A stretch of 63,521 nucleotides of DNA, the filler included, from Octopus bimaculoides (Eukaryota): assembly GCF_001194135.2 (NCBI RefSeq). It is 4 parts of 3 records of this genome, joined end to end, with 100 filler letters (N's around TTAATTAATTAA, not from the genome) between each part and the next. Parts side by side here need not be neighbours in the genome. Positions count along the whole stretch, not along the records: positions 1 to 29,222 come from NC_068995.1; 3 more parts are not named here. One strand, 5' to 3'. The notes beneath the pieces were generated by a model. The model saw nothing but the letters and a program-made list of their open reading frames with translations, was not told the origin of the DNA and did no database searches. Shown here in pieces: positions 12,227 through 28,049 of this stretch (positions are counted from its first letter, which is position 1; the number at the start of each line of letters is the position of its first letter). The translations under genes were made by a program, and so were the position numbers.

Positions 12227-13496
12227 TATGTATGTATGTATGTATGTATGTATGTATGTATGTATGTATGTATGTGTGTGTGTGTATGTGTGTGTGTGTG
12301 TGTGTGTGAGTGTGTGTGTGTGTATGTGTGTGTGTGTGTGTGTGTGTGATATAGATATAGAAAAAGAGGGAGGGAAAGGAATAGACAGATAGAGATAGAA
12401 ACAGACAGAGAAAAAGACCGACCGACTGGCAGAGAGAAAAAGAGAAATGTATGTGTGTGTTTGTAACTTTTTAACATCTTTTCTTCGATTCTTGCATTTT
12501 TTCGCATTTTTTTCTCTAGCTAATGCTAATGTTGATGACATACACATGGGCGGTTGAAATGTTCAAAATTAAGTACATATATGATGTCTTCACTTCTCCC
12601 CAGGCGGGTTTTTGCCTTGGGAGTCTTTATTGGATATTTCCGTCCTTAACGTTTATTTGGTGTAATGATTATTTGAGCAACTATACAGCTGGAAAAGACC
12701 GTCGTAGCTTAATGCTTCGAGTAGTAGCAATAACTGCTTAAATAACTCGTTGTATAAACAAATAAAATTGGATCAATTCCTATAAACTGTAACTGTTTCT
12801 TTTGTATGAATGCAATCTTAACTCATGCAGGAGGTCGTACAGAAACAACATGTGGAACTCTTTTGTAAATCAAAACATATAACGTAAGCATCTTGCAGTG
12901 TTTTTCTTTGTGTGCTTACGTACCAAAAGTGTATTGTCACTGTTTGTGATGGGTATATATTAAATGTTGTTATGGCTTTCTGAAGAGACATGAAACGGAC
13001 ACAATTTTTAAATACTGAGTTTGATTTTCGAATTATTCTTCCAGGTCAACCATATTAGTAGTTGAGATGAATTTATATGGTCCTTGGCATGTTTAAAAGT
13101 GTTTGTTCAGATCTCATCTAACTTAATGTTAAATGTAAATTTCATCTTAGTTTTCTACTCAACTAAGCAATTATTACTTTATGATAATACATTGGTGATT
13201 TGTTTGGTATTGTTCCAAGGAAGTTGACCAGATAATGCTTGAATATGCTGTATGTTTTTTTTTTATCTGGTCAAGGTAGAAAAAGTAATGGTCTAAAGCG
13301 TGCTTAGCCATTTGTAGATTCTTGAATTACATATTAGCTGCATACTAGCAAGCTAGAAATACATGCTATCATAACTAACGTAATATGATCAGATTTCTAA
13401 AAGTTATTTAGAATCAAGGCTCTTTCAGCATAGGTTATTGTCAACAATGAATCTGAATTCTTCATGCTATTCGGTAAAAGAAAATCTAGGAATATA

Positions 13497-13548
<52 letters not shown>

Positions 13549-14478: not shown

Positions 14479-14479
14479 T

Positions 14480-14718
<239 letters not shown>

Positions 14719-16619
14719 TATGTTTGATTTTTGCTTTGCATTTGTACAACTTGTACAGAGACATCAAGAGACTACAAATTAGAAGTTCATGTTGGTATTA
14801 TGCCTAGGATATCATATATTTACTTTTGCGCATAGTATTGTTCTAGAGAATGTTTAAGAAAACATAAGAAAATTATAAGTTTGTTTTAAAATTTGAGATT
14901 ATATAGACAGTATTTGACGTAGGATATGGGCAGTTCCCATGAGTACTATCTTTTGAATTTCTGCCATTTTGGGGTTTCCTGGTATCTGAGCTAGGTAGGA
15001 ATCCCCTTTTGCTATCGTTCTTAGGACACCTATGACAACAAGTATTGTTTTAATCGTGAGGTTCCACATTTGGCAATTTCTATTTCAAGATCTTTATACT
15101 TGCTCAGTTTTTGCTAGGTCTTGACAGATACATTTATGCCGATTGGGACAATCATATCAATGAGAAGGCATGATTTTCGCCTAAAGTCTTTCAATATAAT
15201 GTCTGGCCTATTTGCATCTATCTTTCTGTCAGTTTGAACGGTGAAGTTCCAGAGAAGTGAGATGTGATCATTTTCAAGCAGGTGGTTTGTATTCCCATCA
15301 GTTTTTATCATGGAGCAGGTCCAGGTTTTTGCAAATTACCTAGTGAATATATTGTGCTACTCTATCATGCCTGCTGAGATACTCCGTATGCTCAGGGAGA
15401 CAACATGATCAATGGTTTCATTTTGTTGTTTACATACACGACATGTTGGGCTACTGCCGTTCTTTAATATGTTAGCCTGGTAGTTCCTTTTAGGTAGGCA
15501 TTGATCTTGGGCTGTTATAATAAATCCTTCTGTTTCTGATTTTAAGCCAGAAGACACTAGCCATTGATTGGTAAAGATTTGTCAACAACGGCTCTATTAG
15601 CTCTCATTGAGAGGTTTTTCTTGCCATTTATCAGTAAGAATATCTAAGGCAGGCAGTAGTTTTAGCATGGGTTTTCATACGCTTAGCTTTTTCTGTGCTT
15701 GTTTCCAGTACGTCTAATTCTGGGATATGTTGTATTTGGAATTCACTTAGATATTCCTTTGCCTGTTTTGCTACCGAGTGTGACACTTTCTTGTTTAAGA
15801 CAAGTTTTGACATCCAGTCAACAGAGTTTTTCAAGCAATCTTCATTGTTAATTCCAGATGTAAAAGTCTACGGCCACCCTATTTTCTTGTCAGGTAAAAT
15901 CGTTCTATATCTGCCTTGGAGTGATGCATTCTCTGCATTCTCAACAATTTTCGTATGTTTCTGTCAATATTACATATTTCAGTAATTGACAAGTTAATGA
16001 TATTGAAACTGTAAGTTACGACAGATATGGATAAAGCATTGATTGCTTCGATTCTGTTTCTTGCATTTAGGTCTGTCTTGAGTATTGCCCTTACCCTGTG
16101 ATAACATTCTCTTCTGATTCATTCTCTCATCATTGAATGTTTGATTCCATCACCTTCAGATACTCCTAGGTATTTATAGCGCTCCGCTGGTTCTAACTCC
16201 TTTATGACATTCTGTTGGTCAAGATTAACGTTGGATGTTTCTGTCATTTTCCTTTTGATAAAGGTAACTTTTTCACATTTATCAAGGCCAAATTGCATTC
16301 TAATGTCATCACTGAATTGTTTAACAATCGCTAGTAAGCCCTGTAGCTGTTGGTCATTTTTTGCAAAAAGCTTTAAATCATCCATGTAAATGAGGTGATT
16401 TATATTTTTATCAAATATTTTATAGCCGTATTGTACATCATCAAGCAATTTCGAGAGAGTTATTAAGGCTAGACAAAAGAGGAATGGTGATAGAGAGTCA
16501 CCCTGGAAAATTCCACATGAAATACATCTCCAGCATTGAGAGATTCATTGTCACTGTTCAAAGTCAGTGTGGTTCTCCATGATCTCATATTACATACAAG
16601 AAGTTTCGCAGGGTAGGTT

Positions 16620-17506
16620 CTAGGTACATGGGTACATGTTTGGGTACATGGGGGTTAACACATACTTTTAAAACAAAACAATTTTATTTAATTATAATGT
16701 TAATAAATTATATTTTCAAAATGATTGCCATCATTTTCAATGCATAACTTGATGCGCCTTGCAAAATTCAGGTGAACTCGATTAAATAAGTCTACATTGC
16801 CGTCAATTTCAGCACACTGACTGGTAATGCGTTCTCTCATGTGGTTTCTCTTTCAACATACCCCAGAAAAAGAAGTCAAGGGGAGAAAGGTCTGGTGAAC
16901 GAGGGGACCATTCCACATGACCCCTTCTTCCAATCCAGTGAGGAAAAGTGTCATTAAGCCAATCTCTAACAGTTATGGCAAAATGGGCAGGGGCCCCATC
17001 CTGCTGAAACCAATTCGGAAATCCCTCGCTTAGGCACTCAATTTGAGGTATTAATTTGTTAAAAAGGAAAATTATTATAGCGTGGAAGGTGTTTATAAGC
17101 CATTTAAGAAACACACAAAAACCGTTAGATTCACTTCAACATTTAAATTTAATTTGTCAAAATATTTTCGTCGCTTTGAGACCGCGACCTGTTCACTGAC
17201 AAAATTCTGTGCAGCACAGAATTTTATCTGAACAGGTCGCGGTCTCAAAGCGACGAAAATATTTTGGCAAATTAAATTTAAACGTTGAAGTGAATCTAAT
17301 GGTTTTTGTGTGTTTCTTAAATGGCTTATAAACACCTTCCACGCTGCAATTGTTTTCGTTCCAGCACAGGATCCCAGATCAGGTCACTTGCTATGCAAGT
17401 ACATCTCCGAAAATTATTATTTCTTATATTTAATTGTTTATGTTATGATTGGTGGGTGTCCACAAAGTCTGGGTACTCCATGTACCTAGACTTTCTGGAC
17501 ACCCAG
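16620..17506 (-). mobile_element. IS630-Tc1-mariner (Tc3-like) transposon remnant inserted in the LINE
   Basis: WFQQDGAPAHF...WSPRSPDLSPLDFFFWG. Right TIR ends ...ctggacacccag|TA at 17506; partial left TIR tctaggtacatgg at about 16620. The LINE resumes at 17507, as shown by comparison with the 1-345 paralogue. Confidence 0.82.
17078..17346. mobile_element. Foldback/MITE: near-perfect 267-bp palindrome
   Basis: Arms 17079-17212 and 17214-17345 differ by 3 substitutions plus one small asymmetric loop. Ends ta|tagcgtgg...ccacgctg|ca resemble a decayed TA-flanked CAGCGTGG TIR. Confidence 0.8.
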
Positions 17507-19125: not shown

Positions 19126-19269
<144 letters not shown>

Positions 19270-19319: not shown

Positions 19320-20960
19320 TTATAGCCCTTCTCTTCTATTTACTTCATAACCTCCCCCAACAGTATCGCTTGCCCGTCCATACTTAATTTTGCCTTTCTT
19401 CAAGACTAACACACCACACTTTTTCAGTCCGAACTCCATTCTGATATCAGCAGTGAAAGTGTACACCGTGTCAACAATGGAACTGAATTGGAATTCATCC
19501 TTGCCATAAAGTTTGAGGTCATCCATGAATAGCAAGTGGTAGACTTTTTGTTGGCGGCTCTTGAATACATACCCAACCTTTGCTTTCCACAGTATCAGTG
19601 TTAGTTGTATCATGCACAGTACAAAGATCAGTGAGGGCAGCAGTCCCCGTGGAAGATGCCTCTCATGATTTCTATTGTCTCTAAACTTATTCCATATGCT
19701 GTCATGTTCGTCCTCCACTTTGCCATACTTTTCCAAGCAATCGTTCAACATTCGTTACAATACCAAATACATTCCATAATCCAAGAATATGGGATCATAT
19801 CGTATGCTTTACGATAATTGGTCCATGACATGGCTAAGTTAGTTTCCTCCTCTTGCAGTCTTTATGTACAATTTTGTCTACCAGGACTTGATCCTTGGTA
19901 CCTCTGTACTTACGTTTGCACCCTTTCTGCTCATTGGCAAGACTCCATGTTTTTCCATATATCCGTACTCTGCGACTATTCCAGTCAATAATTTCCACAT
20001 AAGTAACAAGCAGGCCTACCCATTGTTAACCACTCTGGTATTAATTACTTGGTCGGCATTTAACAAGGTGTTGAGTTGTGCAGCTATTCGTGCATGGCAT
20101 TTACCAAAGTTTTTGATCCAGTAGCCTTGAACTCCATCTGGTCCCGGGCCCTTTCAGTTGCCCACTTTTTTGCTGATTTTCTTCACTTTCCTAATTGAAA
20201 TGACTAGTTCTGTCTGTTTTGGATAGCCTACTGCTTATTTCAGTTCTTGCAACCATTCAGCATCCTTTTTGTGTTCCTTGTTTTTGCTCCAGATGTCACT
20301 CCAAGACCTTGGACTTTCAATGTTATCTGGTATCAACTTTTCTTCTGTACAGTCTAAATTTATTTCTTTATAGAGTCTCTTCTGATCTACTCTGAATAAC
20401 CTATTCTGCTGGTATTCATTCTTCGGTCGTATCTTACCATCTTTGCTTTCTTTGCAACGAGGCGCTGTTTCCGTTCCTCCACTAATACTTTCAGGCCTAT
20501 TTTTTTTTCATTATCATACTTCCTGTTCAGTGCCCTGTATTTTTGTTGGCTTTTAAGCTCCCCCTTTTCTTTTCGGTTTAACACAGAAATGTCCTTCGAG
20601 AGCATATCTTACCCCGCCTGTATTCTTCTTTTCCACCATAGATCTTTTCTTTTGTCACTCCCATTATACTTATTCTTCGTGACATCAACACTCATATTTT
20701 CTGATACAACAATACTTGCTGCCTTAATCAAATTGTTTGTTTCTGTGATGTTTTTTGTTCTGATGTATTTCAGAATTCACATTTTTCGTTACTTGATTCA
20801 ATTTCCACCAATCAGGTTTTTTAAGGTTGCAAATAATGTTGCTCTCGTTCTCTTGTAGCCTTGTCTTTATTCTGTCGTAGATTGTCTTTTGCCCATCTGT
20901 CATGTCACCATTAGTTTTATTGCCTTCTTCCAGACCAACTAAATGTCTCTCATAGAGCAA
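19320..20960 (-). mobile_element. Second R4/Dong-like LINE fragment (different subfamily)
   Basis: HLLFMDDLKLYGK...DIRMEFGLKKCGVL and GPGPDGVQGYWIK motifs; N-terminal QRLVAKKAKMVRY region. Confidence 0.82.
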
Positions 20961-23727: not shown

Positions 23728-23957
23728 GTTTCTTGGAGTATCATCACTGAGTACCCTGCATGGAGACACTTGCAATGAAGTACCTGGATTAGTGTGGAGG
23801 CAAATAGAAGTATGTCGTAACAATCCTCAGACACTCTATTGCATCAGTGAAGGTGCTAGGAAAGGAATTATGGAGTGCAAAGCACAGTTTCGTTATGAAC
23901 GTTGGAACTGTACAACCCAACGGAATCTTTCGGTGTTTGGACAAACTTTAACTAAAG
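23728..23957 (+). CDS. Wnt: Internal coding exon (typical exon-2 position) of a Wnt-family ligand; subfamily unresolved (WntA-like is a guess)
   Basis: Translates (W)FLGVSSLSTLHGDTCNEVPGLVWRQIEVCRNNPQTLYCISEGARKGIMECKAQFRYERWNCTTQRNLSVFGQTLTK(G), with the Wnt N-terminal C..PGL..Q..C / EC..QF...RWNC / VFG motifs. Acceptor tttgtag|G at 23727/23728 after a pyrimidine tract; donor AAAG|gtaaca at 23957/23958. The 230-nt exon is phase 2 to phase 1, as in Wnt genes. Confidence 0.93.
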
Positions 23958-24325: not shown

Positions 24326-25112
24326 TCATGTCTATTATATTAATTGAGTGAACGAATAAATAATACCGGAATTTATCAATCATGTCACTCTCTAATGTAG
24401 TAAACTTTAAAACAATATAACATTTTAAATGGTTTCTTTTGAACAGCGTCGGCAGCTTTCTTTGAACATGATTTGATAGGGTCAAAATATTCTGCTTGGG
24501 TCCTGCTATCCGCGTATAGAAGCACGTTCTGCCTTTATGGACGAAGTTGCGAAGTTTAATGACATATTCAAAATAGGAATACCTTTAACGGTTCTTTAGC
24601 TTACCACCGCATTCGGTTATCTACCTCTTCTTTTTTGTTTTCGATTGAAAGATTGTAGTCCCACCCATTTAGCATTTCTTAAGTGTTAGTAATCCTGATT
24701 AGAAATTTTACTTGATGATTTGTTGATTAATCAACATGTTGCCGCTTGCTTGTTTATTTGGTTGGCCTGATGAGTTGAGAGTATGCAGCATATTACGTAA
24801 TCTTATGAATGTTGTTTATATTGCATACCTAACTGTATTATGCTTACGTCACAATAAAACCTCTCAACGAAACAAATGTAGCAACTACCAGATAACCCAG
24901 TTGTCCGTTTTTGTGTGTTTTTTCTTACAACACGTTTAATGTTCCATTCATCGTTTGATACTTTTGAATAATATTGCAGTTGTGGATTACATAACAACGG
25001 TGAACTTCCCTACATCGAAACATTCCGTGCTATGATAATGGATATCATAACTTTCTGCTTTGCGTTATTCTGGGTGGGACCCTTGTAAATCAAAATTATA
25101 TATATGTATGTA

Positions 25113-25168
<56 letters not shown>

Positions 25169-25172
<4 letters not shown>

Positions 25173-25590
25173 TGGGGTTAAACTAGTAGTAACATTCATC
25201 AGCCAATTTGATGTGACGACTGACTTTACTGTTCAGTATAGTTTCTACTCCGGTCTCTTCGTGAGGTTTCACAACTAGCTATATTGTTTGTTGCAAATCA
25301 GTGACCGATGGTCACTTTGTTTACAATATATCGTTAGCGTTAGCGGACTCTGGCTATCGCTTTGGCGGAGGTACTCCCGACTGAGGAGTGGCCAAATAGC
25401 TCGAAACTGAGTCAGTCTCGCGACCCTGATACCCGCTAGAGAGTGATAGAGGTTCGCTCCCCCTGCTAACAATATATTGATTGTATATAAGAGGTGCAGA
25501 GTTGCGCCGATAACCAGCAGGCGGAGAATCTGCTTGGGGTTAAATTGGTAGTAACCTTCAACAGCCACTTTGATGTGGCAACTGGCTTTA

Positions 25591-25594
<4 letters not shown>
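25169..25594 (+). mobile_element. Hammerhead-containing retrozyme-like or Penelope-pLTR-like element (362-nt unit plus about 60-nt terminal redundancy)
   Basis: Direct repeats 25173-25232 and 25535-25594 (52/60 identical by hand, period 362) enclose the hammerhead. Flanked on both sides by (TA)n. No recognisable coding capacity. Confidence 0.7.
25371..25427 (+). ncRNA. Extended type I hammerhead ribozyme
   Basis: CTGAGGA (25381-87), stem II G88-C02 with loop CAAATA, GAAA (25403-06), 4-bp stem III (ACTG/CAGT, loop AGT), GTC cleavage triplet (25415-17), stem I TCCCGA/TCGCGA (5 of 6 paired) preceded by GTAC. Confidence 0.88.
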
Positions 25595-25631
<37 letters not shown>

Positions 25632-25634
<3 letters not shown>

Positions 25635-25870
25635 CTTTATTGCCCACAGGAGGCTAAATACAGAGGGGACAAACAAGGACTGACAAAGGGATTAAGTCGA
25701 TTACATCGACCCCAGTGCGTAACAGGTACTCATTTAATCGACCCTGAAAGGATGAAAGGCAAAGTCGACCTCGGTGGTATTTGAACTCAGAACGTAACGG
25801 CAGACGAAATACCGCTAAGCATTTCGCCCGGCGTGCTAACGATTCTGCCAGCCCTATGCCAGCTCGCCGC
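25632..25870 (-). mobile_element. SINE family A with a third 3' tail type
   Basis: Standard head and body; 3' end ...gtcccctctgtatttagcctcctgtgggcaataaagaaa followed by (TA)n. Confidence 0.88.
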
Positions 25871-25887
25871 CCTATGCCAGCTCGCCG

Positions 25888-26900
25888 GTTGAGTAAAAGT
25901 AAGTAACGCTTTGAAACATGAAGAATTTATATCGGATTTTTGCAGAGTTTCGAAATGATTTTAAACATTTTTTTGCAATTGTCTTATAATACAGACATAC
26001 ACTTACCCAAATGCATCAACAAATGAGCATTGATCTTTTATTCACCGCTGTTACAATCATCTGAAATGGAACTCTCAAAGCGCGATATTCGAGCAATTTT
26101 GCTATTCAACTTTTAAAAAGGTTGTGAAGCCGCTGAAACTGCTCGCGATATCAACGAAACGTTTGGTGAGGAAATGGCTAGTGAGTGGTCAGCTCGAAAA
26201 TGGTTTAAACGATTTCGCAGTAGAGACCTGAGCCTTGAAGATTGTGAGCATAGTGGACCTCCATCTGTCATCGGTGACGGTCAATTAAAGGCCGTCACTG
26301 AGAAAAGATCCACGTAAAACCACTCGAGAACTAACAAAAGAACTTCAAGTTAGCCCAGAAAACTGCTTGCAACCATTCGCATGTGATCGGAAAATTTAAA
26401 ATCCCGACAAATGGGTACCACTCTATTTGAATGAAAATCAGAAAATGCGCAGATATGAAATTTTCTCGTCGCTTTTCCGTAACCAGACTGATCCATTTCT
26501 CGACCGTAATGTAAGTTGTGATGAAAAATGGATTCTGTACAATAATAAAAAGGTTCTTCGCAGTGGTTGGACCTAAATGAAGCACCGAAAACCTTCCCTA
26601 AACCTGAGATTTACAAAAAGAAACCTAAATGAAGCACCGAAAACCTTCCCTAAACCCGAGATTTACAAAAAGAAAGTTATGGTGCCTGTTTGGTGGTGCA
26701 CTGCTGGACTCATCCACTATAACTTCTTAAAACCCGGAAAAACCATTACTGCAGAAACATATTGCCATGAAATTGGCAAAATGAACGAAAAACTGCTACT
26801 TCTCCGTCCCAGACAAGTCAATACAAGAAAGCCAATCATTTTTCATGACAATGCTCGACCACACGCTTCACTAATAATGCTGAAGAAGTTGAGGGGACAT
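25888..26900 (+). mobile_element. mariner (Mos1/Hsmar-like) transposon, 3'-truncated pseudogene
   Basis: ATG at 26066: MELSKRDIRAIL...AAETARDINETFG...WFKRFRS, DEKWILYNN, KKVMVPVWW and FHDNARPH, with frameshifts. Confidence 0.9.
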
Positions 26901-27327
26901 AAGTATCGTATGATAATATTCATGACCATATCTAGCCATGATCTGTCAACTCACTCTTGTTCTTTATTCAAAATAGACATAGTCTTCTAGTCTCAGATTT
27001 AATAGATGACACGGAGAGAAATAAATTAGAAATGAATTACAACACATACAACCCTATGACCCCCACTATGCTCCATGCGATTCTAAGAAATTGCAGTCTA
27101 TTCTAAGCCTAGTGGATTAGCTACAATAGCGATAACATGAATTTCTTCCATCTTCTTAGTCTGTTAAAATATTTCAGAAAAATTATTTTAATGTGTCCTA
27201 CTTGTTAAAAAATTCTATATTTTGCGCTGCATTTAAATTGATGTAATGATTGCATTGTTCAATTAAATGGAGCCGCTTGAAACGGTCGTACTCATTACTA
27301 CTTGCTATTCTTTTGCTTATTTTGACA

Positions 27328-27490: not shown

Positions 27491-28049
27491 CAGGGTGTTT
27501 CGGCTAGATTTGATGGGCATAAAAGGAAAAGAAAACGCAATATTCCATCCAACTTAAAAGTATTTTAAAAGCTCAAAACGTATGGCTGTGAGATAACAGC
27601 TTACTCAAAGCAGCCAGCCTCAGCTTCCACCATAGTTTTAAGACGGCTCCGAAACCTGGTGCGTGCGTTCCCTACTGTGTCCCTGGAAAGATCATTGAAT
27701 ATCTCCGTGATTTTGGCCACTAGCTTGGCCTTGGTGTTGTGGGCAGAGTGGTTGATGTCTTTCTCAACCGCACCCCACACATAGTAATCTAAGGGATTGC
27801 AATCGGGGGAATTTGGGAGGCCAAAAATTGGGACAACTACTTCTGACTCTTTCCGGAGGTGTGATAAGGAGCCAAATTCTGCAGCCACATATACAGCCTT
27901 CCTGCAGCAACCCTCTCAAGACAGGGATTGAACACAGTCTCCAGTATGGCTGTTGAAATTGAGCCTAAGGCCTTGTTCAAAGGTGTGGGGTGGCAGGACC
28001 TCACTCTCACTGCACACACGAACGCGCACGCGCATACACTCACTCTCTA

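What the first reader, a model, noticed from the sequence alone, without database searches (positions are those of the whole stretch)
25169..25594. Retrozyme-like unit: 362-nt non-coding monomer with about 60-nt terminal redundancy, inserted in (TA)n
Seen: direct repeats 25173-25232 and 25535-25594 (8 differences in 60, period 362) bracket one hammerhead, with pure (TA)n on both sides. Established: non-LTR retrozymes and Penelope pLTRs in animals carry type I hammerheads, and tandem transcripts self-cleave to monomers that circularise. Inference: one monomer plus partial overlap is what reverse transcription running slightly more than once round a circular RNA would leave. This would be a cephalopod family of small ribozyme circRNA retroelements targeting TA microsatellites. 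I cannot tell from the window whether such a family is already catalogued.
Basis: partly seen in the sequence, partly recalled or inferred. Interest (0 to 1): 0.88.

Follow-up and report, generated by a model that had tools for sequence, protein, structure and literature searches.

The report
Lone hammerhead retrozyme copy in TA repeat
A 425-base insert splitting a TA microsatellite is one old, solitary copy (1.17 units of 362 bases) of a small non-coding retroelement carrying a complete hammerhead ribozyme, a known kind of animal element (non-LTR retrozyme); one copy cannot show that it came from an RNA circle or that a family exists.

Summary
They bracket one type I hammerhead, and pure (TA)n abuts both ends.

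The hammerhead is structurally complete: all core bases, three helices, a GUC cleavage site at 25417|25418, and the UAC bulge plus CAAAUA loop of canonical animal type I ribozymes. It scores only 18.7 bits in Rfam (threshold 52) and has two stem defects.

Unit size, GC content, lack of coding capacity and strong self-pairing fit published non-LTR retrozymes. Partial-tandem insertion into (TA)n fits the published insertion habits of Penelope-like elements, the proposed mobilisers.

The insert runs unbroken across the cleavage site, so its template was a ligated circle or an uncleaved multimer. The data do not separate these. Hammerhead-less Penelope-like elements also make partial tandems, and the two repeats differ by 14%.

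There is no second copy in the 29 kb, and no cephalopod genome was reachable. Copy number, a TA preference of the family and circular RNA are therefore untested.

Verdict: probably a new member of a known kind, of modest interest.

The parts
25097..25169 (.). Left half of the target microsatellite: impure TA/TG 25097-25115, pure (TA)27 25116-25169
   Evidence: TRF row 25097-25169; pure run 25116-25169
25170..25232 (+). Upstream partial copy (terminal redundancy). It equals unit positions 115-177 when numbering starts at the ribozyme cleavage site
   Evidence: 54/63 identical to 25532-25594 at offset 362
25233..25594 (+). One full 362-nt unit. GC 47%, non-coding, strongly self-paired
   Evidence: Period 362. 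Linear MFE -123.8 kcal/mol, z=-3.4. Circular MFE -116.0, z=-3.1, 64% paired, GC 0.47 vs 0.369 for the piece
25532..25594 (+). Downstream copy of the terminal repeat. It is the 3' end of the insert and abuts (TA)n
25361..25446 (+). Type I hammerhead ribozyme. Distal stem I GGCGG/CCGCU. UAC bulge at 25372-25374. Stem I 25375-25380 / 25418-25423 (one C.C mismatch). Core CUGAGGA 25381-25387. Stem II 25388-25402 (4 bp, bulged U25389, loop CAAAUA). GAA 25403-25405. Stem III 25406-25416 (ACUG/CAGU, loop AGU). C17 = 25417
   Evidence: Full-length Rfam HH9 alignment, 18.7 bits; pair list; descriptor 1 hit vs 0 in 40 Mb random; alignment with metagenomic canonical type I hammerheads
25417..25418 (+). 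Predicted self-cleavage site (GUC|U). It lies inside the insert and is uninterrupted
   Evidence: Position follows from the alignment; cleavage itself not tested
25595..25632 (.). Right half of the target microsatellite, (TA)19, in phase with the left half
25633..25890 (-). Context: SINE copy whose 3' end (..AATAAAGAAA) abuts the (TA)n, so the microsatellite may have grown from the SINE tail
   Evidence: Six related copies in the piece; sequence; ARAGORN finds no intact tRNA
23780..23957 (+). Context: early exon of a Wnt gene with an AAG|GTAAC donor. The insert lies about 1.2 kb downstream on the same strand, probably intronic
   Evidence: Pfam wnt E=5.4e-14, profile positions 2-62 of 305; no later Wnt motifs anywhere in the piece

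Best explanation
This is one old retrotransposed copy of a small non-autonomous, non-coding element of the non-LTR retrozyme type.

Shown: the insert is 425 bp, that is 63 nt of a preceding unit followed by a full 362-nt unit. It splits one (TA)n tract and carries a single, structurally complete type I hammerhead on the + strand. The predicted cleavage site lies intact inside the insert.

Inferred: a + sense RNA that was continuous across the cleavage site was copied by target-primed reverse transcription from a nick in the (TA)n. That RNA was either a ligated circle or an uncleaved multimer. The enzyme was most likely a Penelope-like element (PLE) reverse transcriptase/GIY-YIG endonuclease, because partial tandems and (TA)n targets are published hallmarks of PLE insertions. 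Synthesis ran 1.17 unit lengths.

Since then the copy has decayed. The terminal repeats are about 16% apart and two ribozyme stems are damaged. With only one ribozyme, the locus cannot release a unit-length RNA. It is best read as a dead daughter copy, sitting in sense orientation in a probable Wnt intron.
For: - Repeat geometry and sharp boundaries, and (TA)n on both sides in phase.
- Hammerhead: every invariant core base is present (CUGANGA, GAAA, A15.1-U16.1, C17), with three helices in a full-length Rfam alignment. My descriptor finds 1 hit in the piece and 0 in 40 Mb of random sequence.
- The spacing TAC-6 nt-CUGANGAGU...CCAAAUAG...CGAAAC matches canonical type I hammerheads recovered independently from metagenome Ga0126343.
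- Stem III has 4 bp, unlike the minimal helix-III-less variants of PLE pseudo-LTRs (PMC7761336).
- Unit length (362 nt; published range 170-400), GC (47%; published <50%), high self-pairing (z about -3) and absence of an ORF match the published description of non-LTR retrozymes (PMC7229834).
- PLEs are the proposed mobilisers of retrozymes (PMC7229834; preprint 10.64898/2026.07.22.740005).
- Penelope-like elements are annotated in Octopus vulgaris (PMC13282606).
Against: - Only one copy is visible, with no second copy in 29 kb. Multi-copy status, the defining tandem arrangement and expression are unverified.
- The Rfam score is far below gathering (18.7 vs 52).
- The catalytic fold (-14.0 kcal/mol) is less stable than the competing fold of the same 86 nt (-25.2).
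- Stem II needs a bulged U, and stem I has a C.C mismatch.
- No PLE ORF lies nearby; the two RVT_1 fragments at 16-19 kb were not classified.
- One (TA)n insertion does not prove a preference. The tract may simply be a SINE tail, and another (AT)27 at 13492-13545 is unoccupied.
No tool confirmed it.
Confidence: 0.6

Rival explanations
1. One reading: a 362-nt circular RNA, made by hammerhead cleavage and ligation, was reverse transcribed slightly more than once round (rolling-circle cDNA). This left one unit plus a 63-nt overlap.
For: The cleavage site 25417|25418 is internal and intact, and the insert ends (unit positions 115 and 177) are unrelated to it, as expected for priming at an arbitrary point on a circle. 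[quoted passage not shown] The monomer folds as a stable circle.
Against: Two passes over the same circle give identical overlaps. Here they differ at 9 of 63 positions, so all of that must be later decay. Partial tandems arise in PLEs that have no hammerhead, so circles are not needed (PMC8557442). An uncleaved dimer transcript gives the same product and explains the divergence directly. No RNA data exist.
Confidence: 0.3
2. The template was a linear RNA: either an uncleaved multimer transcribed from a tandem array, or two monomers joined by the template switching that builds PLE pseudo-LTRs. No circular intermediate was involved.
For: A 5'-truncated copy followed by a full copy is exactly the PLE partial-tandem layout (PMC8557442). 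The 14% difference between the repeats is natural if they copy two different monomers of an array. The weak catalytic fold would favour uncleaved transcripts.
Against: A linear unit defined this way (25233-25594) has ends that match neither the ribozyme cleavage site nor any recognisable promoter or terminator feature. Internal priming on a multimer is as ad hoc as priming on a circle.
Confidence: 0.3
3. It is not an independent small family but a fragment of an autonomous Penelope-like element: a pseudo-LTR or 3' end, 5'-truncated or internally deleted.
For: PLE insertions are heavily 5'-truncated and carry hammerheads in their pseudo-LTRs (PMC8557442). Xenopus retrozymes resemble PLE termini (preprint).
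Against: The repeat period is 362 nt, not the 3-4 kb of a PLE unit. The hammerhead is canonical, with a 4-bp helix III and loop-loop motifs, whereas PLE ribozymes are minimal variants lacking these (PMC7761336). No RT or GIY-YIG coding remnant lies in or next to the unit.
Confidence: 0.1
4. It is a DNA-level remnant: a satellite array of 362-bp units shrunk by unequal crossing-over or deletion to 1.17 units, with TA tracts that expanded independently at its edges.
For: Non-LTR retrozymes exist mainly as tandem arrays that behave like minisatellites (preprint). Divergent repeats fit old array neighbours.
Against: Both edges meet pure (TA)n precisely, and excision restores a single in-phase tract. 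The unit's own ends are not TA-rich. Identity drops to background immediately outside the repeats.
Confidence: 0.07
5. It is a chance hammerhead-like motif inside an unrelated repeat, such as a TA-targeting Tc1/mariner MITE or a Helitron fragment.
For: The Rfam score is below threshold, with an extrapolated whole-piece E-value above 1. TA is the Tc1/mariner target, and mariner fragments are in the piece.
Against: There are no terminal inverted repeats; every inverted repeat found is the TA tract itself. The termini are GCCTGG...TACTGT, not TC...CTRR. The descriptor and motif controls give 0 random hits. The design is shared with independent canonical type I hammerheads.
Confidence: 0.03

Closest known systems
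Metazoan non-LTR retrozymes (Cervera & de la Pena 2020, PMC7229834; review PMC7761336)
   Same: Canonical type I hammerhead with helix III and loop-loop motifs. Unit of 362 nt (published range 170-400). GC below 50%. No ORF, LTR, PBS or PPT. Strongly self-paired monomer. More than one unit length per insertion.
   Different: Only 1.17 units and one ribozyme at this locus, whereas the published elements are dimers to large multimers. No copy-number or circular RNA evidence. Insertion in a (TA)n microsatellite was not found for retrozymes in the held literature. No held paper reports them in cephalopods.
Penelope-like elements and their pseudo-LTRs (Craig et al. 2021, PMC8557442)
   Same: Partial-tandem insertion (truncated copy + full copy), a (TA)n microsatellite target with no discernible target-site duplication, and presence of a type I hammerhead.
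   Different: No RT/GIY-YIG ORF. Unit of 362 nt rather than 3-4 kb. Canonical rather than minimal hammerhead. No adjacent inverted truncated copy.
Intronic hammerheads of amniotes (Rfam Hammerhead_HH9, RF02275)
   Same: Best Rfam match, full-length type I architecture. Sense orientation in a probable intron.
   Different: Scores 18.7 bits against a threshold of 52, so it is not a member. HH9 is a conserved single-copy motif, not part of a repeat unit.
Canonical type I hammerheads in metagenome Ga0126343 (loci L051, L067, L078, L097, L108)
   Same: Same layout: TAC, 6-nt stem I, CUGANGAGU, loop CAAAUA, CGAAAC.
   Different: Helix III is only 2 bp. The surrounding element is unrelated in sequence, occurs in inverted arrangements and has no microsatellite flanks.

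Membership tests
Non-LTR retrozyme | Canonical type I hammerhead: full catalytic core, helices I-III, GUH cleavage site | tested here: met
   All core bases are present and cleavage is at GUC|. Two stem defects: bulged U in helix II and a C.C mismatch in helix I.
Non-LTR retrozyme | Loop 1 / loop 2 tertiary-interaction motifs of canonical type I ribozymes | tested here: inconclusive
   The UAC bulge and CAAAUA loop sit at the same spacing as in independent canonical examples. The interaction itself cannot be tested by sequence.
Non-LTR retrozyme | Tandem repeats (dimer or more), so that two ribozymes flank a unit | tested here: not met
   1.17 units and one ribozyme. The 2026 preprint counts such monomers as derivatives of active arrays.
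Non-LTR retrozyme | Unit of about 170-400 nt, GC below 50%, no ORF, LTR, PBS or PPT | tested here: met
   362 nt, GC 0.47. The ORFs have no relatives.
Non-LTR retrozyme | Highly self-paired monomer RNA | tested here: met
   z=-3.4 as a linear molecule; z=-3.1 as a circle, 64% paired.
Non-LTR retrozyme | Many genomic copies; expressed as linear and circular RNA | not testable with these tools
   No second copy in 29 kb. No eukaryotic genome or RNA-seq collection was available. Protein-route and pattern searches were empty.
Penelope-like element insertion | Partial tandem: 5'-truncated copy upstream of a full copy | tested here: met
   25170-25232 followed by 25233-25594.
Penelope-like element insertion | Microsatellite target, (TA)n as in Naiad elements | tested here: met
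   One case only. A preference cannot be inferred from it.
Penelope-like element (autonomous) | ORF with RT and GIY-YIG endonuclease | tested here: not met
   None in or next to the unit. The RVT_1 fragments at 16119-16448 and 19320-19751 are distant and unclassified.
Penelope-like element pseudo-LTR | Minimal type I hammerhead lacking helix III and loop contacts | tested here: not met
   Helix III is ACUG/CAGU and the loop motifs are present, against the description in PMC7761336.
Rfam Hammerhead clan CL00010 (HH9) | Score at or above the gathering threshold | tested here: not met
   18.7 bits against 52.
Tc1/mariner MITE | Terminal inverted repeats flanked by a TA duplication | tested here: not met
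   No inverted repeats other than the TA tract.
Helitron | 5'-TC ... CTRR-3' termini with a subterminal hairpin, inserted between A and T | tested here: not met
   The termini are GCCTGG ... TACTGT.

The most novel reading that the evidence does not exclude
The source genome (said to be a cephalopod) carries a multi-copy, possibly still active family of ~360-nt hammerhead retroelements that are integrated preferentially into (TA)n by a Penelope-like GIY-YIG endonuclease. That would give retrozymes their first target-site signature, tie them to a particular PLE clade, and extend them to cephalopods.
Probability: 0.25. Interest if true: 0.5.

Novelty: new member of a known kind. Interest (0 to 1): 0.3.

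Why it matters
Retrozymes are a recently recognised route to abundant ribozyme-made circular RNAs in animals, and it is still debated which enzyme moves them.

This copy combines a canonical retrozyme-type hammerhead with two insertion habits published for Penelope-like elements: a partial tandem and a (TA)n target. If the rest of the family shows the same, that would be structural support for the Penelope hypothesis in a phylum branch where retrozymes have not been reported in the literature I could search.

On its own, the locus is a single decayed copy with no demonstrable function. Its one local point of interest is that a sense-strand self-cleaving motif sits in a probable Wnt intron.

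Tried and rejected
- Rfam at gathering thresholds over the whole piece found nothing. At E<=1 it found only microsatellite-driven miRNA look-alikes and no second ribozyme.
- A search for other copies in the piece by sensitive blastn found none.
- Route to other copies through predicted proteins: a concatenated six-frame ORF query of the unit gave no hit, and an exact look-up of the 133-aa ORF gave none.
- Route to orthologous loci through the Wnt exon: no candidate in the protein collection. Presence/absence in sister species could not be checked.
- The strict ribozyme pattern gave 0 hits in metagenome, viral and prokaryote-genome collections.
- A looser pattern gave 120 metagenome loci. Only about six carry true hammerheads, all from one sample (Ga0126343). 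They were useful as design comparators but are unrelated to this unit and have no TA flanks.
- A tRNA-like origin of the unit: ARAGORN found nothing.
- MITE and Helitron readings were rejected on the termini.
It was replaced by a motif scan, which found no further Wnt exons.
- The first version of the self-match shuffle test missed offset 362 through an off-by-one error. It was corrected.
- The literature search found no held paper on hammerheads or retrozymes in cephalopods, or on retrozymes in microsatellites. PMC5785218 is not held.

Full report
**1. Observation**

The region reads as (TA)n, then a 425-bp insert, then (TA)n.
- The repeat finder reports one two-copy direct family, 25166-25232 vs 25528-25594 (67 nt, 85%, spacing 362). 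blastn of the unit against the piece gives the same.
Over 25170-25232 vs 25532-25594 there are 9 in 63 (6 transitions, 3 transversions; JC 0.158, K2P 0.161).
- The self-match is 54/63, against at most 34/63 in 300 shuffles.
- In register just outside the repeats, identity is 7/30 and 9/30, so the repeat ends coincide with the insert ends.
- Pure TA runs occupy 25116-25169 and 25594-25632. Deleting 25170-25594 joins T25169 to A25595, giving one in-phase tract. Phase agreement alone has even odds.
- No target-site duplication can be read inside a dinucleotide repeat.

**2. The ribozyme**

At curated thresholds Rfam finds nothing in the piece. With permissive settings the only ribozyme match is Hammerhead_HH9 at 25361-25446 on the + strand. 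It scores 18.7 bits against a gathering score of 52, but aligns over the whole model (1-77).

The alignment and my pair list give this structure:
- Distal stem I: GGCGG/CCGCU.
- Bulge containing UAC.
- Proximal stem I: UCCCGA/UCGCGA, with one C.C mismatch.
- Core: CUGAGGA.
- Stem II: G-C, G.U, G-C, C-G, with a bulged U and loop CAAAUA.
- GAAA.
- Stem III: ACUG/CAGU, with loop AGU.
- GUC, with cleavage predicted between 25417 and 25418.

Every invariant core nucleotide is present.

Controls:
- A descriptor requiring the core and all three helices hits only here in the piece (both strands) and never in 2 x 20 Mb of Markov sequence of piece or unit composition. I set its thresholds after seeing the motif, so it is an upper-bound argument, not a blind test.
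- The sequence motif GTACT-N5-CTGANGAG-N3-6-CAAATA-N3-6-GAAAC occurs once in the piece and in none of 100 shuffles.
- A looser pattern pulled 120 metagenome loci. The descriptor recognised true hammerheads in five of them (L051, L067, L078, L097, L108), all from sample Ga0126343; L019 and L104, from the same sample, matched the pattern but not the descriptor. These true hammerheads align with the window motif at TAC, CUGA.GAGU, CCAAAUAG and CGAAAC with identical spacing.

So this is the canonical animal type I design. It is not the helix-III-less minimal form described for Penelope pseudo-LTRs (PMC7761336).

Weak points:
- The catalytic fold of the 86-nt region is -14.0 kcal/mol, against -25.2 for its best alternative fold.
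- Stems I and II are imperfect.
- Activity is untested.

**3. The unit**

Numbered from the cleavage site, the insert covers unit positions 115-362 and then 1-177.
- The 362-nt monomer has GC 0.47 (piece 0.369).
- It folds to -116.0 kcal/mol as a circle (z=-3.1, 64% paired) and -123.8 as a linear molecule (z=-3.4).
- Its longest ORF is 105 codons on the minus strand. A concatenated six-frame ORF query found no relative in the protein collection.
- ARAGORN sees no tRNA-like part.

These values fit the published description of metazoan non-LTR retrozymes: about 170-400 nt, GC below 50%, highly self-paired, no LTR/PBS/PPT, canonical type I hammerhead (PMC7229834).

**4. Mechanism: what the anatomy does and does not say**

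The cleavage site is internal and intact, and neither insert end corresponds to it. A hammerhead-cleaved linear monomer primed at its 3' end is therefore excluded as the template. The RNA must have been continuous across the site, either as a ligated circle or as an uncleaved multimer.

It is not the only way to obtain 1.17 units:
[quoted passage not shown] This also holds for Naiad PLEs, which lack hammerheads (PMC8557442).
- A circle read twice predicts identical overlaps. The observed 14% difference must then be later decay. Using the octopus repeat-age calibration in PMC13282606, that is roughly 20 My. This is a rough inference from 63 nt and assumes the host is an octopus.
- Two different monomers of a transcribed array would explain the difference directly.

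The same paper reports a strong (TA)n insertion bias in Naiad, and a hypothesised microsatellite bias in Neptune PLEs, that obscures target-site duplications. PLEs are the favoured mobilisers of retrozymes (preprint 10.64898/2026.07.22.740005). My best reading is therefore a PLE-type target-primed insertion of a retrozyme RNA into (TA)n, with the template topology left open.

With only one ribozyme, this locus cannot release a unit-length RNA. It is a dead daughter copy.

**5. Surroundings**

- A SINE on the minus strand (25633-25890) has six relatives in the piece. It ends ...AATAAAGAAA directly against the right (TA)n, so the microsatellite may have grown from that tail.
- A Wnt exon lies at about 23780-23957 on the + strand (Pfam wnt E=5.4e-14, profile positions 2-62 of 305, donor AAG|GTAAC).
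- No later Wnt motifs occur anywhere in the piece. The insert, about 1.2 kb downstream on the same strand, is therefore probably intronic and in sense orientation.
- No PLE ORF is nearby. Two RVT_1 fragments and mariner-type fragments lie elsewhere.
- A similar (AT)27 at 13492-13545 is unoccupied.

**6. What could not be done**

No eukaryotic genome, repeat library or RNA-seq collection was available.
- There is no second copy in the piece.
- Protein-route searches failed.
- Strict pattern scans of metagenome, viral and prokaryotic collections were empty.

Copy number, a TA preference, circular permutation of junctions, circular RNA and the cephalopod origin itself are therefore untested.

**7. 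Comparison and novelty**

It works like a non-LTR retrozyme and was inserted like a PLE.
- Retrozyme features met: ribozyme type, size, GC, non-coding, self-pairing.
- Retrozyme feature not met at this locus: tandem multimer.
- Retrozyme features not testable: multi-copy status and circular RNA.
- It is not an HH9 member (score below threshold), not an autonomous PLE, not a MITE and not a Helitron.

In the held literature I found no report of hammerhead retrozymes in cephalopods, or of retrozymes inserted in microsatellites. Retrozymes are, however, described 'from molluscs to arthropods'.

Verdict: new member of a known kind.

Noticed in passing
window 23780-23957 (+): Early exon of a Wnt gene (Pfam wnt E=5.4e-14, ...ECKAQFRYERWNCTT...) with an AAG|GTAAC donor. 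The hammerhead-bearing insert lies about 1.2 kb downstream in sense orientation, probably in the following intron, so an active ribozyme would cut the pre-mRNA.
   Followed up: partly
window 25633-25890 (-); also 452-544, 6848-7004, 7526-7673, 7733-7884, 7936-8102, 8179-8326: Family of SINE copies. One abuts the right (TA)n with its 3' end. The copies at 7735-8276 form a 223-bp-period cluster (TRF, 2.4 copies).
   Followed up: partly
window 25851-25886: Perfect 18-bp tandem duplication (GCCCTATGCCAGCTCGCC x2) at the head of the SINE.
   Followed up: no
window 13492-13545: Uninterrupted (AT)27, similar in size to the split tract. It is an unoccupied potential target in the same piece.
   Followed up: no
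window 16119-16448 (-) and 19320-19751 (-): Two reverse-transcriptase fragments (Pfam RVT_1, E=1.2e-8 and 9.6e-6; ..YMDDLKLF.. / ..FMDDLKLY..). The clade (LINE or Penelope-like) was not determined.
   Followed up: partly
window 26577-26990 (+), 16809-17114 (-), 27601-27888 (-): Mariner/Tc1-type transposase remnants. The first hits Pfam Transposase_1 at 8.4e-21. A 52-bp tandem duplication at 26571-26675 lies at its start.
   Followed up: partly
window about 2320-2660: Run of N (assembly gap) inside the piece, seen as X runs in ORF translations.
   Followed up: no
window 14479-14716 and 19126-19268: Long adjoining trinucleotide microsatellites: (TTC)27 next to (TTA)53, and (TGT)24 next to (TTA)24.
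   Followed up: no
window 25183-25223 vs 25545-25585: Of the 9 differences between the terminal repeats, 4 are A (left copy) vs G (right copy) and 1 is the reverse. Whether this reflects A-to-I editing of the RNA template or ordinary decay is unknown.
   Followed up: no
L051, L067, L078, L097, L108 (+ L019, L104), metagenome Ga0126343: A repeated element carrying a canonical type I hammerhead (GCUACACAGUG-CUGACGAG-UCCCAAAUAGGAC-GAAAC-AGCUGUC). It is present in several contigs, often as inverted partial copies (e.g. L078 2089-2259 vs 2401-2553), and has no microsatellite flanks. Probably host (animal) DNA in a host-associated metagenome.
   Followed up: partly
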